Of a DNA stretch of 64,000 bases, positions 52,590 through 55,374 are shown piece after piece. Position numbers and translations under genes: made by a program. Position 1 is the stretch's first letter, and each line of letters starts with the position of its first letter. The stretch is taken from sequence record NC_048046.1; one strand, 5' to 3'. Below the pieces are notes generated by a model, which worked only from the letters and a program-made list of their open reading frames with translations, had not been told where the DNA came from and ran no database searches.

Positions 52590-53999
52590 TTAGTCGCGGA
52601 CACCCTCCGGCAGAAGCGCCTCGCCGATGACGCCGGCCGCTTCGGCTTCATGGATGAAGCGCAGGACCGATTCCGAGAAGCCGTCGATGTGCGTCCACTT
52701 GCCGTAGCCCACGCCGTTCTTGTTCGAAGCGACGTTGATCACGTACGAGTGCTTTGCCTTCGGCGCCGGCATGCTGCCGCCGCCCAGCATGTGGTTGACG
52801 CTCGCGCCCGAGGCTTGCTCATCGGTGATGATGATCAGGCGATCGAACTCGAACTTCGCCTGGACAGTGGCGACGGCTTGAACGAGCGCCGTGCCACCGT
52901 AAGGCTGCGAGCGAGCGATCGCTTCGACGCCGGCCATGCCCTTGCGAGCCGGCACTTCCACCACCGAGTTCGAGAAGCTGATCACGCGCAGGTCTTCGGC
53001 CGGGATGACCGAAGCCAGGGCGCAGGCAGCATCACGACGCGTCAGATCGGACTTGGCCGACAGGCGGTCCCGCATCGAACCCGACACGTCCACCATGACC
53101 ACGGTGCGGCCCGGCAGCTTCGGCATGTCGGCGATCGACGCGATCAGCGCTTCATCCAGGGCCGGTTCGAACGACGGTGCCGCACGAGCCGCCGCGATGT
53201 AGCGGAACGGCAGGACGCGGTGCGCGCCGCCCTTGCGGGCCTTAATCGCATCGATCACCAGCTTGCGGTCGACGCCGGCCTGTTCCATGTTGCGCAGGTT
53301 GCGCAGCAGGGCGAGGTAGCCGAGCTTCTTGTCTTCCAGCAGACGGGTGAACTCCGCCTTCTTGTCACCGCCGGCCGACAGCGCGACTTCCCAGGTGTCC
53401 GGCGACTCCAGCGTCTGTTCGACCAGACCCTTGTACAGGGTTTGACGTTCGTCGTTGGCGGCCTTCGGGTGGCTCAGGAACAGCACGTCACGCAGACGCA
53501 CCTCCTTGGCGCGGTCGTACTTGGCGATCTGGTACGCGTCGAACTTCGCGAACGCCTTGGCGAGGCCCAGCTTCATTTGCTTGGACAGCGGAGCCTTGCG
53601 GGCGCCGTCGCGCGGCGGGTTGTACTTCCAGTACAGCGCCACCAGTTCCGACAGTTCGTCGGCGCGCTGGATCACGCGGGCGATCGTCTCGGAGACGAGG
53701 CCGTTGCCCGAGCCGCGCTTGGCCAGGGTGACGAGCAGCAGCAGCGGCACGTGACGCAGGTTGGCGACTTCACGGGCTTCGATGGCGATCTGAGCCAGGG
53801 TGTCGACCGGGACCTGCTCGGCCAGCTTGGCGATGCGGGTGCTGATCTCGACGCCGTCCTCGTAGGCCTCGTTCTCGAACAGGAGGCAGGACATCACCGA
53901 CCGGCGCAGCGCCTGGACGGTCGTCATGCGGGCAGCGGTCGCGCCCTCGTGCGTCTTTTCGGTGAAGGTGTTCTTGGTCGAACGGTTGGTCGATGCCAT
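52590..53999 (-). CDS. rsr: Ro60/TROVE-domain RNA-binding protein with a C-terminal vWA domain
   Basis: THEGA, LRRSVMSCLLFE, DTWEV, LGYLALLRNLRNM, LPFRY, vWA MIDAS DVSGSM and ITDEQ. Confidence 0.92.
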   Translation of the reverse strand: MASTNRSTKNTFTEKTHEGATAARMTTVQALRRSVMSCLLFENEAYEDGVEISTRIAKLAEQVPVDTLAQIAIEAREVANLRHVPLLLLVTLAKRGSGNGLVSETIARVIQRADELSELVALYWKYNPPRDGARKAPLSKQMKLGLAKAFAKFDAYQIAKYDRAKEVRLRDVLFLSHPKAANDERQTLYKGLVEQTLESPDTWEVALSAGGDKKAEFTRLLEDKKLGYLALLRNLRNMEQAGVDRKLVIDAIKARKGGAHRVLPFRYIAAARAAPSFEPALDEALIASIADMPKLPGRTVVMVDVSGSMRDRLSAKSDLTRRDAACALASVIPAEDLRVISFSNSVVEVPARKGMAGVEAIARSQPYGGTALVQAVATVQAKFEFDRLIIITDEQASGASVNHMLGGGSMPAPKAKHSYVINVASNKNGVGYGKWTHIDGFSESVLRFIHEAEAAGVIGEALLPEGVRD

Positions 54000-54187: not shown

Positions 54188-54349
54188 GAGAGGTTGAGGG
54201 GGAACTGGCGAGCACGGTTTCTTATTCCGGTGCGTTTGGCCACTCCGCCACATGATCCTGTTGGGGATCAAGGTGGGACTCGAACCCACGTGCCCTTTCG
54301 GACGCCGGTTCCACGAAGTATCCGCACTCTGCGCCACCCTCAACCTCTC
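54188..54349 (-). ncRNA. Y-RNA-like unit 2 (permuted class II tRNA module)
   Basis: 13-bp terminal stem; Leu-type variable arm gtccgaaagggc, T-arm, acceptor closed by ccaaca, D-arm. Confidence 0.88.
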
Positions 54350-54362
54350 GGTCGTTGGTGTC

Positions 54363-54506
54363 GAGGTAGAGGGGGAACAGTCGGCAACGCGTTTTTAGCG
54401 CTCTACCACTGAGCTACCTTGGGCTTTTGGCCCTCGGGTTGGACTCGAACCAACGACCTCTCGATTAACAGTCGAAGAACTCGTCGCCTACGCCACCCTC
54501 TACCTC
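54363..54506 (-). ncRNA. Y-RNA-like unit 3 (permuted tRNA retaining an Asn GTT anticodon hairpin)
   Basis: gaggtagaggg/ccctctacctc stem; tcga-ctGTTaa-tcga, T-arm, acceptor, D-arm tagctcagtggtagagc. Confidence 0.88.
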
Positions 54507-54508
54507 AA

Positions 54509-54648
54509 TCGGCGTGTAGGTTGACACATGGGGAACTGGCGCCGTCGGTTTAGGGGGATCGAACCCCGTGGCGCGGATTTGCGGCCGCACCATTTCAACC
54601 AGCGAAGTAGCCGAAAGCTACGCCACCATGTGTCAGCCTACACGCCGA
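54509..54648 (-). ncRNA. Y-RNA-like unit 4 (non-permuted, D-armless, Cys-like module)
   Basis: About 22-bp terminal stem; gcgg-ccGCAaat-ccgc, then T-arm gggg-ttcgatc-cccc. Confidence 0.8.
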
Positions 54649-54661
54649 CACCCCGATCATT

Positions 54662-54832
54662 AGGCGGTGGGGGAACAAGCGATCCCACAACCTTAGGCGC
54701 TCTAACCGCTGAGCTACACGCCCATCATCAATTCAGGCCGGAGCCTGGACTGGTGGTGGACGCGGCTGGATTCGAACCAGCGACCTCCCGCTCCTAATGC
54801 GAAGTAAGTGACATCTACGCCACCCACCGCCT
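54662..54832 (-). ncRNA. Y-RNA-like unit 5 (permuted tRNA with an internal ACCA)
   Basis: aggcggtggg/cccaccgcct stem; T-arm gctgg-ttcgaat-ccagc, cgcgtcc-ACCA, linker hairpin, gggcgtg plus D-arm. Confidence 0.88.
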
Positions 54833-55239: not shown

Positions 55240-55278
55240 CTTGTCACATAGGGCGATTCCGATGTCAACAATGCTGGC
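55240..55278 (-). promoter_or_regulatory. Promoter of the Y-array/rsr unit
   Basis: Minus strand GCCAGcattgTTGACA...ctatgt directly upstream of unit 8. Confidence 0.6.
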
Positions 55279-55374
55279 AAACTTTTTTCGAGAAATGTGT
55301 GCCTGACTGTCAGACATGAAAAAGCCCCGCAACGTCCGGACGTCACGGGGCTTCCCCAGGTAGGTGATGGCGAC

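What the first reader, a model, noticed from the sequence alone, without database searches (positions are those of the whole stretch)
54240..54780. Internal CCA ends in permuted units may allow processing to two-piece, chargeable RNAs
Seen: unit 5 reads acceptor-3' cgcgtcc-A-CCA, then a linker hairpin, then a fully complementary acceptor-5' gggcgtg. Unit 2 reads cttgatc-C-CCA-acag-gatcatg. Established: alphaproteobacterial tmRNA is circularly permuted and matured by excising such a linker. Inference: host RNase P and 3' trimming could convert these Y RNAs to two-piece, aminoacylatable forms.
Basis: inference. Interest (0 to 1): 0.65.

Follow-up and report, generated by a model that had tools for sequence, protein, structure and literature searches.

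The report
Phage Y RNAs with built-in CCA ends
Two of the small Ro60-partner RNAs (Y RNAs) encoded by a giant Caulobacter phage contain a tRNA-like arm with a ready-made CCA tail inside a loop, and one also carries the mark that alanine-charging enzymes read, so they are probably cut into two-piece, possibly chargeable RNAs, as was shown once in a mycobacterium.

Summary
The window is Caulobacter phage CcrPW. On the minus strand, eight Y-RNA-like units precede a Ro60/Rsr gene.

- **Unit 5:** T-arm, cgcgtcc, A, CCA, a 30-nt linker with a hairpin, gggcgtg, then a D-arm. All 7 pairs form; two are G·U.
- **Unit 2:** cttgatc, C, CCA, acag, gatcatg. Six of 7 pairs form.

This is not chance. In 148 non-redundant modules of this kind next to Rsr genes, CCA sits exactly at tRNA positions 74-76 in 22. 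It occurs 0-1 times at each neighbouring offset (p about 4e-13).

Unit 5 also carries G1-C72, G2-C71, G3·U70 and A73, the alanine identity set. In orthologues, pairs 5-7 covary and the linker ranges from 5 to 31 nt, while this set stays fixed.

The idea itself is not new. Mycobacterium smegmatis YrlA is cut by RNase P and gains CCA (Chen 2014). What I found in no paper is a CCA written in the genome, an alanine-type acceptor end, and the frequency of both.

No RNA reads were available, so cutting and charging remain inferred. A relic of tandem tRNA genes is the main rival.

The scan's other notes on this stretch (array, permuted tRNA bodies) agree. I rate it a new variant of a known kind.

The parts
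54662..54832 (-). It holds a Y stem (GGCGGUGGG / CCCACCGCC), the Ro60-type 5' motif GGCGUAG, and a permuted tRNA-like body.
   Evidence: Sequence. The MFE fold reproduces the Y stem, T-arm, acceptor helix, linker hairpin and D-arm, z = -3.4. Rfam YrlA scores 30.5 bits, below its gathering score.
54765..54781 (-). Unit 5 T-arm (GCUGG UUCGAAU CCAGC).
   Evidence: Identical in the orthologues L203 and Colossus.
54754..54764 (-). Unit 5 acceptor 3' strand CGCGUCC (54764-54758), A73 (54757) and CCA (54756-54754). This is the predicted mature 3' end of the 5' piece.
   Evidence: GUCCACC is invariant in 5 orthologues.
54724..54753 (-). Unit 5 linker, 30 nt: a second CCA, the hairpin CAGGC-UCCG-GCCUG (54747-54734), then an A/U-rich leader ending in U(-1). 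Predicted to be excised.
   Evidence: Substitutions between related phages cluster here. Orthologue L203 has an unrelated 31-nt linker with the same hairpin-plus-leader layout; L290 and L313 have 5-6 nt.
54699..54723 (-). Unit 5 acceptor 5' strand GGGCGUG (54723-54717; G+1 at 54723 is the predicted RNase P site), U8 A9, and D-arm GCUC-AGCGGUUA-GAGC.
54191..54346 (-).
   Evidence: Fold z = -4.2; the acceptor hairpin and Y stem appear in the MFE structure, the T-arm does not. Scanner result.
54262..54289 (-). Unit 2 T-arm (54289-54273), acceptor 3' strand CUUGAUC (54272-54266), C73 (54265) and CCA (54264-54262).
   Evidence: The orthologue in Brevundimonas phage Bambus reads CUCGCGC-G-CCA-CAAU-GCGCGGG.
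54258..54261 (-). Unit 2 linker ACAG. G(-1) can pair with C73.
   Evidence: In a related phage assembly it reads CCAG (54261 T>G).
54232..54257 (-). Unit 2 acceptor 5' strand GAUCAUG (54257-54251), U8 G9, and D-arm GCG-GAGUGGCCAAA-CGC.
52590..53999 (-). Ro60/Rsr gene (469 aa, TROVE plus vWA domains) directly 3' of the array. It is the expected protein partner.
   Evidence: Pfam TROVE 1.3e-18 and vWA_Ro60. Syntenic in CcrColossus and the Brevundimonas phages.
55263..55268 (-). TTGACA -35-like hexamer after the terminator of the upstream HTH gene. It is the likely start region of the array-rsr transcript (inference).
   Evidence: Conserved in Colossus and in the Brevundimonas phages Bambus and Gurke. 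The consensus sigma-70 scan found no full promoter.

Best explanation
Units 5 and 2 are YrlA-type Y RNAs, partners of the phage's own Ro60 protein. Their tRNA-like module is written in permuted order. Unlike most YrlA RNAs, its acceptor arm is an exact 7-bp tRNA acceptor stem followed by a genome-encoded discriminator base and CCA, then a disposable linker.

The most likely course has four steps.
1. The array is transcribed together with rsr (inferred).
2. Host RNase P cuts 5' of G+1, at 54723 in unit 5 and 54257 in unit 2 (inferred from the M. smegmatis precedent and from substrate features).
3. The linker left on the upstream half is removed back to CCA (inferred). Unit 2 needs only 4 nt of exonuclease trimming. 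Unit 5 needs the route that also removes the structured insert of permuted tmRNA precursors.
4. The two halves stay paired through the Y stem and acceptor stem and sit on Ro60 (inferred). Expected sizes are about 79 + 62 nt for unit 5 and 85 + 67 nt for unit 2.

The free end of unit 5 carries G1-C72, G2-C71, G3.U70 and A73, the set that alanyl-tRNA synthetase reads on tRNA-Ala and tmRNA without needing an anticodon. Unit 5 is therefore the one unit for which charging can be predicted concretely. I put processing at about 0.5-0.55 and alanylation of unit 5 at about 0.3.
For: - **Anatomy:**
- **Partner gene:** Ro60/Rsr lies directly downstream.
- **Precedent:** M. smegmatis YrlA, the one tested YrlA with a 7-bp acceptor stem, is cut by RNase P in vitro and in vivo and gains CCA. 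The 82- and 65-nt halves co-precipitate with Rsr (PMC4201824; 10.1101/312249).
- **CCA position:** CCA lies at 74-76 in 22 of 148 non-redundant Rsr-linked modules, against 0-1 at each other loop offset. Binomial p = 4e-13.
- **Residue -1:** U in 11 of 22 CCA modules against 23 of 126 others. This matches the known RNase P preference, which I state from my own knowledge.
- **Unit 2 orthologue:** in phage Bambus it keeps CCA while three stem pairs (3:70, 5:68, 6:67), the discriminator and the linker all changed.
- **Hyphomicrobiaceae:** all four loci keep NCCA with different stems.
- **Alanine-type stem:** 4 of 22 CCA modules against 2 of 126 others, Fisher p = 0.005.
- **Unit 5 orthologues:** L203, L290 and L313 keep GGGC/GUCC-A-CC. 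Pairs 5:68, 6:67 and 7:66 covary and linkers run 5-31 nt.
- **Same-cell processing demand:** all 29 phage tRNA genes encode CCA and are spaced 1-10 nt apart. The phage's own permuted tmRNA has the same T-arm, CGGCUCC-ACCA, hairpin, leader, GGGGCCG layout. The infected cell must therefore already process such junctions.
- **Pieces stay together:** cofolding predicts the halves remain paired through the Y stem.
Against: - No RNA evidence exists. The only RNA run laid gave no reads.
- The CCA is dispensable in some lineages. The unit 2 orthologues in Kabachok and Domovoi, and a Hoeflea locus (L150), lack it.
- In the uncut fold of unit 5, A73 pairs with U(-1) and C75-A76 pair inside the linker helix. 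In unit 2, C73 can pair with G(-1). Either pairing could slow or shift RNase P cleavage.
- The 30-nt structured linker of unit 5 cannot be removed by simple exonuclease trimming.
- Unit 5 has C4-G69 rather than the G4-C69 of tRNA-Ala and tmRNA.
- Unit 2 has a U.U mismatch and no recognisable identity set.
- My survey used a home-made scanner that requires stem complementarity. It covers mostly alphaproteobacterial relatives, and the rows are not phylogenetically independent.
Confidence: 0.5

Rival explanations
1. Evolutionary relic. The permuted modules arose from tandem tRNA genes. N73-CCA plus linker is simply the old junction between two genes (3' end, spacer, next 5' end). The loop stays closed in the RNA and the CCA has no present function.
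For: - Wang et al. proposed that YrlA arose from dimeric tRNA precursors (10.1101/312249).
- In this phage every tRNA gene encodes CCA, and neighbours lie 1-10 nt apart.
- A tandem tRNA-Gly pair at genome position 64999 looks like a module to my scanner and to the Rfam YrlA model (28 bits).
- The CCA was lost without loss of the unit in Kabachok, Domovoi and L150.
- The trait needs at least 10-12 gains or losses on the Rsr tree.
Against: - A relic should decay at the rate of the linker. Instead CCA persists where the stems, the discriminator and the linker have turned over.
- U is enriched at -1.
- Alanine-type ends are over-represented, compared with 2 of 29 tRNA genes in this phage being tRNA-Ala.
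- The G3.U70 wobble is kept while neighbouring pairs covary.
- A junction of this form would be cut by RNase P whatever its origin, so 'relic' and 'processed' do not exclude each other.
Confidence: 0.25
2. The uncut loop is the working form. A closed loop displaying NCCA on a tRNA-shaped body acts as a decoy or docking site for factors that read tRNA 3' ends. Candidates are RNase P, the phage's own CCA-adding-type enzyme, and host tRNA-end-directed defence nucleases or transferases.
For: - Most YrlA RNAs are closed-loop tRNA mimics (10.1101/312249).
- Many chromosomal alphaproteobacterial modules have only 1-2 nt after CCA, giving 5-6-nt loops.
- The phage carries a tRNA-repair kit: RtcB and a CCA-adding-type nucleotidyltransferase.
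Against: - No known factor reads an internal CCA in a loop.
- The 4-31-nt linkers of the phage units serve no purpose in this model.
- The tested 7-bp case (M. smegmatis) is cut.
Confidence: 0.12
3. Chance. The two CCA triplets are coincidental and the stems are ordinary hairpins.
For: Only 3 nt are involved per unit. The Rfam YrlA hits are below the gathering score.
Against: - Position-specific enrichment with p about 4e-13.
- About 0.004 within this array alone.
- Conserved in four related phages and in distant orthologues.
Confidence: 0.02

Closest known systems
Mycobacterium smegmatis YrlA (Chen et al. 2014, RNA 20:1715; PMC4201824)
   Same: - A Y RNA encoded 5' of rsr, with a permuted tRNA-like module and a 7-bp acceptor stem.
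- Shown to be cut by RNase P, to end in CCA, and to persist as two halves (82 + 65 nt) on Rsr.
- The predicted halves here are of similar size (79 + 62 and 85 + 67 nt).
   Different: - There, only part of the CCA is encoded; CA is added after nibbling. Here the whole N73-CCA is in the genome, followed by a defined linker.
- Here the units sit in an eight-unit phage array.
- One unit here carries the alanine identity set. Nothing of the kind was reported for M. smegmatis.
Closed-loop YrlA RNAs (Salmonella Typhimurium YrlA; Rfam RF02553; Wang et al. 2018)
   Same: Ro60-binding stem plus T-arm, acceptor-like stem-loop and D-arm in the same permuted order, beside rsr.
   Different: - Salmonella YrlA has a 6-bp stem closed by a loop, has no CCA, and is not cut by RNase P.
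- The units here score only 30-33 bits against the Rfam model (gathering score 69).
- The Ro60 motif here reads GGCGUAG rather than GNCGAA(N)G.
Circularly permuted two-piece tmRNA of alphaproteobacteria (Keiler et al. 2000; PMC3985003), including the copy in this phage
   Same: - The order T-arm, acceptor 3' strand, ACCA, structured insert, short leader, acceptor 5' strand.
- G1-C72, G2-C71, G3.U70 and A73.
- Maturation by excision of the insert.
   Different: - No tag reading frame, no pseudoknots, and a normal D-arm instead of the SmpB-binding one.
- Rfam permuted tmRNA scores 24 bits (gathering score 47), and ARAGORN makes no call here.
- The body continues into a Ro60-binding stem.
tRNA-Ala acceptor helix and alanine minihelices
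   Same: G3.U70 with A73 and G1-C72/G2-C71 on a 7-bp stem stacked on a T-arm. AlaRS is known to need no anticodon.
   Different: C4-G69 instead of G4-C69. The anticodon arm is replaced by the Y stem. Charging is untested.
Permuted tRNA genes of Cyanidioschyzon and some archaea (Soma et al. 2007)
   Same: The acceptor stem is first made as a closed loop and is opened by tRNA end-processing enzymes.
   Different: Those RNAs are circularised by the splicing machinery and become ordinary one-piece tRNAs with an anticodon loop. Here there is no anticodon loop and no such machinery.

Membership tests
YrlA-type bacterial/phage Y RNA | Encoded next to, and on the same strand as, a Ro60/Rsr (TROVE) gene. 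| tested here: met
   The array at 55232-54040 (-) ends 40 nt before the rsr start at 53999. Pfam TROVE and vWA_Ro60.
YrlA-type bacterial/phage Y RNA | A stem formed by the 5' and 3' ends, carrying the conserved 5'-strand motif GNCGAAN0-1G. | tested here: inconclusive
   The terminal stem is present and folds. The motif reads GGCGUAG (unit 5) and GGCGCAG (unit 2), one position off the published motif. Ro60 binding was not tested.
YrlA-type bacterial/phage Y RNA | A tRNA-like module in the order T-arm, acceptor-like stem-loop, D-arm. | tested here: met
   cmscan alignments to the YrlA model, own scanner, MFE fold of unit 5.
YrlA-type bacterial/phage Y RNA | Score at or above the Rfam RF02553 gathering threshold (69 bits). 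| tested here: not met
   33.4, 30.5 and 29.9 bits. Tandem tRNA genes in the same genome reach 28 bits, so the score alone does not discriminate.
Two-piece, RNase P-processed YrlA (M. smegmatis type) | An acceptor stem of exactly seven base pairs stacked on the T-arm. | tested here: met
   Unit 5 has 7 of 7 pairs (two G.U). Unit 2 has 6 of 7.
Two-piece, RNase P-processed YrlA (M. smegmatis type) | Cleavage by RNase P at G+1, with both halves bound by Rsr. | not testable with these tools
   No RNA run holds the phage; 0 reads were laid.
Two-piece, RNase P-processed YrlA (M. smegmatis type) | The 3' end of the upstream half is CCA. | tested here: inconclusive
   CCA is encoded at the right place. 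Whether it becomes an end is unknown.
Permuted tmRNA | T-arm, acceptor 3' strand, ACCA, insert, acceptor 5' strand, with G3.U70. | tested here: met
   Unit 5. Same layout as the phage's own tmRNA.
Permuted tmRNA | A tag reading frame with resume codon, pseudoknots, and a reduced D-arm. | tested here: not met
   ARAGORN makes no tmRNA call in the window. Rfam tmRNA_permuted scores 24.2 bits against a gathering score of 47, matching model positions 36-95 only. The D-arm is canonical.
Alanine-accepting RNAs (tRNA-Ala, tmRNA) | G3.U70 wobble pair in the acceptor stem. | tested here: met
   Unit 5: G54721 pairs with U54760. Kept in orthologues while pairs 5-7 covary.
Alanine-accepting RNAs (tRNA-Ala, tmRNA) | A73 discriminator, G1-C72, G2-C71 and a free CCA end. 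| tested here: inconclusive
   A73, G1-C72 and G2-C71 are present. A free end would require processing. G4-C69, a minor element, is C4-G69 here.
Alanine-accepting RNAs (tRNA-Ala, tmRNA) | Aminoacylation by AlaRS. | not testable with these tools
   Needs a biochemical assay.

The most novel reading that the evidence does not exclude
A recurrent class of phage Y RNAs, of which unit 5 of CcrPW/CcrColossus and its orthologues next to Rsr in other viral contigs are examples, are two-piece, alanine-accepting tRNA mimics. After tmRNA-style excision of the linker they are charged by AlaRS. Through the charged end, Ro60 is linked to the translation apparatus (AlaRS, EF-Tu or the ribosome), or the RNA is shielded from the exonucleases that Ro60 recruits. 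That would make them a third kind of alanine-charged non-tRNA, beside tmRNA and viral tRNA-like ends.
Probability: 0.25. Interest if true: 0.85.

Novelty: new variant of a known kind. Interest (0 to 1): 0.6.

Why it matters
What the tRNA-like half of bacterial Y RNAs does is an open question. The one processed example (M. smegmatis) has been treated as an exception.

This survey suggests that about one in seven Rsr-linked modules, in phages and alphaproteobacteria, carries a complete encoded N73-CCA exactly where a tRNA ends. A subset also carries the alanine identity set.

That turns a vague idea, that a Y RNA 'could potentially be aminoacylated', into a specific experiment with defined ends, a defined enzyme (AlaRS) and a defined control (G3.U70 changed to G3-C70). 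The experiment would run in a tractable laboratory phage-host pair.

If confirmed, it would link Ro60 RNA surveillance to tRNA charging or translation during phage infection.

Tried and rejected
- **RNA evidence.** The look-up of sequencing runs listed no RNA holder of the phage. Read laying on 1,501 letters gave 0 reads from the only raw RNA run. The three other runs were DNA contigs of 93-95% identical relatives. They are useful only for variation.
- **Origin of the units.** I compared them with the phage's own tRNAs and found only generic tRNA similarity, no clear donor.
- **tmRNA reading of unit 5.** Rejected: no tag frame, no pseudoknots, a normal D-arm, and sub-threshold scores.
- **Histidine identity for unit 2 (G-1:C73).** Considered and set aside. 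The phage's own tRNA-His has A73. From my own knowledge, Caulobacter-group bacteria use a tRNA-His without G-1.
- **Metagenome scan to widen the unit 5 family.** A scan for its variable-loop/T-arm word returned mostly ordinary tRNA-Arg and tRNA-Pro genes. Only four real permuted modules were found: two with alanine-type stems and two without. The 5-of-5 result from viral contigs is therefore not general.
- **Host association.** NCCA modules occur in 10 of 49 alphaproteobacterial against 0 of 18 other bacterial modules. The numbers are too few and not independent, so I treat this as a hint only.
- **Supplementary tables.** Those of Chen 2014, which list phage Y RNAs, are not held. The Annual Review PMC10870794 is not held.
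- **The count of structure pairs.** Not run on alignment A3, because it needs a long typed structure string. Pair counts were made by script instead.

Full report
**What the stretch is**

The window is identical to Caulobacter phage CcrPW (MH588545, 116000-117300) and 95.9% identical to CcrColossus. The genes of interest lie on the minus strand.

- The terminator of an HTH gene ends near 55318.
- A conserved TTGACA hexamer lies at 55268-55263.
- Eight Y-RNA-like units follow, from about 55232 to 54040.
- A 469-aa Ro60/Rsr gene with TROVE and vWA domains lies at 53999-52590.
- The same order, dUTPase, HTH, about 1 kb of RNA units, then rsr, occurs in CcrColossus and in giant Brevundimonas phages whose Rsr is 67-70% identical.
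- Y RNAs in CcrColossus were already listed by Chen et al. 2014, according to PMC12135203.

Rfam's YrlA model hits three units at 30-33 bits, far below its gathering score of 69. Tandem tRNA genes in the same genome reach 28 bits. I therefore assign the units to the YrlA kind on anatomy and on the neighbouring rsr gene, not on that score.

**The observation**

It is correct.

- **Unit 5** reads T-arm, CGCGUCC, A, CCA, a 30-nt linker containing the hairpin CAGGC-UCCG-GCCUG, GGGCGUG, U8 A9, then a canonical D-arm. Seven standard pairs form, two of them G.U.
- **Unit 2** reads T-arm, CUUGAUC, C, CCA, ACAG, GAUCAUG, U8 G9, then a class-II-type D-arm. A long variable arm precedes the T-arm. Six of seven pairs form.
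- The MFE fold of unit 5 reproduces the Y stem, T-arm, acceptor helix, linker hairpin and D-arm (z = -3.4).
- The fold of unit 2 gives the Y stem and acceptor hairpin but not the T-arm (z = -4.2).

**Is it more than chance?**

I fetched Rsr loci from several sources:
- phage records
- IMG/VR viral contigs
- bacterial genomes

I scanned them with a simple script. It required a T-arm, 7 nt, a loop of 3-60 nt, 7 complementary nt, U8, R9 and a D-arm.

| Measure | Result |
|---|---|
| Non-redundant modules | 148 |
| CCA at loop offset 1 (tRNA positions 74-76) | 22 |
| CCA at offsets 0, 2, 3, 4, 5 | 0, 0, 1, 1, 0 |
| Expected frequency per site | about 2% |
| Binomial p | 4e-13 |
| U at -1, CCA modules | 11 of 22 |
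| U at -1, other modules | 23 of 126 |
| Linker length after CCA | 1-30 nt |

Most other modules close the stem with GNRA- or UUCG-type loops.

On an Rsr tree the CCA trait is clustered but needs at least 10-12 changes. All four Hyphomicrobiaceae loci keep it on different stems.

The unit 2 orthologue in phage Bambus reads CUCGCGC-G-CCA-CAAU-GCGCGGG. The CCA is kept while three stem pairs (3:70, 5:68, 6:67), the discriminator and the linker all differ. In Kabachok and Domovoi, however, the same unit has a closed 5-nt loop. The CCA is therefore favoured but not indispensable.

**The alanine signature**

Unit 5 has G1-C72, G2-C71, G3.U70 and A73. The third pair, G.U, is the main mark read by AlaRS on tRNA-Ala and on every tmRNA (PMC3985003).

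- In the unbiased survey this stem type occurs in 4 of 22 CCA modules against 2 of 126 others (Fisher p = 0.005). One of those two others reads ACCU.
- A pattern scan of viral contigs found further alanine-type ACCA modules next to Rsr: L203, L290, L312 and L274.
- L203, L290 and L313 are clear orthologues of unit 5. They share the variable loop, T-arm and D-arm.
- In these orthologues GGGC/GUCC-A-CC is invariant. Pairs 5:68, 6:67 and 7:66 change in a compensatory way.
- The linker is 30-31 nt in CcrPW, Colossus and L203, with unrelated sequence but the same hairpin-plus-short-leader layout. It is only 5-6 nt in L290 and L313.
- A metagenome scan for the same variable-loop word mostly found ordinary tRNA-Arg and tRNA-Pro genes. 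It added two alanine-type and two non-alanine permuted modules. The signature is recurrent, not universal.

**Context in the same genome**

- All 29 tRNA genes of the phage encode CCA, and many lie 1-10 nt apart.
- The phage encodes its own circularly permuted tmRNA outside the window. Its layout is T-arm, CGGCUCC-ACCA, an 81-nt hairpin insert, leader CUGAU, then GGGGCCG.
- The infected cell must therefore already cut and trim junctions of exactly the two kinds seen in units 2 and 5.
- The phage also encodes a CCA-adding-type nucleotidyltransferase and RtcB, but no SmpB.

**What is known**

- Chen et al. 2014 showed that M. smegmatis YrlA, the tested YrlA with a 7-bp acceptor stem, is cut by RNase P in vitro and in vivo and acquires CCA. 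Its 82- and 65-nt halves stay on Rsr. The authors noted that it 'could potentially be aminoacylated'.
- Wang et al. 2018 describe most YrlA RNAs as closed-loop permuted tRNA mimics without a free CCA end, and propose an origin from dimeric tRNA precursors.
- In the papers I could search, I found none that describes a genome-encoded internal CCA or an alanine identity set in Y RNAs.

**Mechanism, and what is shown or inferred**

Shown: the anatomy, the position-specific CCA, the alanine set and its persistence, and the parallel with the phage's tRNA clusters and tmRNA.

Inferred:
- RNase P cleavage at G+1.
- Removal of the linker back to CCA.
- Persistence of two paired halves on Ro60. Cofolding keeps them together through the Y stem.
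- Alanylation of unit 5.

Points against:
- There are no RNA data.
- N73 can pair with residue -1, and in unit 5 part of the CCA pairs inside the linker helix.
- The CCA has been lost in some relatives.

The main rival is that CCA plus linker is a fossil of the tandem-tRNA junction from which the module arose. That origin is plausible, but it does not exclude present-day cutting.

**Verdict**

It is a new variant of a known kind. The known kind is the two-piece YrlA of M. smegmatis. The variant has a fully encoded CCA, a tmRNA-like linker and an alanine-type acceptor end, and is unexpectedly common in Rsr-linked modules of phages and alphaproteobacteria.

Noticed in passing
G000:C1:140723-141138 (outside the window): The phage encodes its own circularly permuted, two-piece-type tmRNA (tag VNDNDAPVMEQRLAA) with an 81-nt structured insert after ACCA. 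No SmpB gene was found in the genome.
   Followed up: partly
G000:C1:251440-251530 (+), outside the window: Another permuted tRNA-like module with an internal A-CCA and a 12-nt linker (CCCGCUG-A-CCA-UCUCUCGAAUAA-CGGUGUG, 6 of 7 pairs, canonical D-arm). It lies far from rsr and also scores 24 bits with the Rfam YrlA model.
   Followed up: no
G000:C1:217730-218092 and 176744-177889 (outside the window): Phage-encoded CCA-adding-type nucleotidyltransferase (PolyA_pol family, 427-aa frame) and RtcB RNA ligase. Together with Ro60, the Y RNAs, 29 tRNAs and the tmRNA, they form a tRNA maintenance kit.
   Followed up: no
In CcrColossus, unit 3 becomes a tandem G.A/A.G with a GAAA loop. This looks like a conserved non-Watson-Crick motif rather than decay.
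   Followed up: no
window 54754-54759 and 54258-54264, minus strand: Unit 5 reads ACCA-CCA-G, a doubled CCA. In a related phage assembly the unit 2 linker changes from ACAG to CCAG, which gives C-CCA-CCA-G there too.
   Followed up: no
L001:3405-3545 (CcrColossus record): The GenBank record annotates part of unit 5 as 'tRNA-Gln' and places a 'terminator' inside the Y-RNA array. CcrPW annotates a small hypothetical ORF over unit 1. These are probably mis-annotations of Y-RNA units.
   Followed up: partly
L006:1230-2430 (Rhizobium phage RHph_TM39): About nine Y-RNA-like units with a different 5' motif (GUUGCGA ... UACUUCG) precede its TROVE gene. Two carry internal CCA: U-CCA-UCUAU, and C-CCA-AUACUAUG with a tRNA-Leu-like D-arm.
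   Followed up: partly
L290 (IMG/VR contig of 107,975 bases): An alanine-type ACCA module sits next to a partial Rsr gene. The contig has the same length as Microcystis phage Mvi-JY20 (hit H19), so the type may also occur in a cyanophage.
   Followed up: no
I saw no evidence linking it to the Y RNAs.
   Followed up: no
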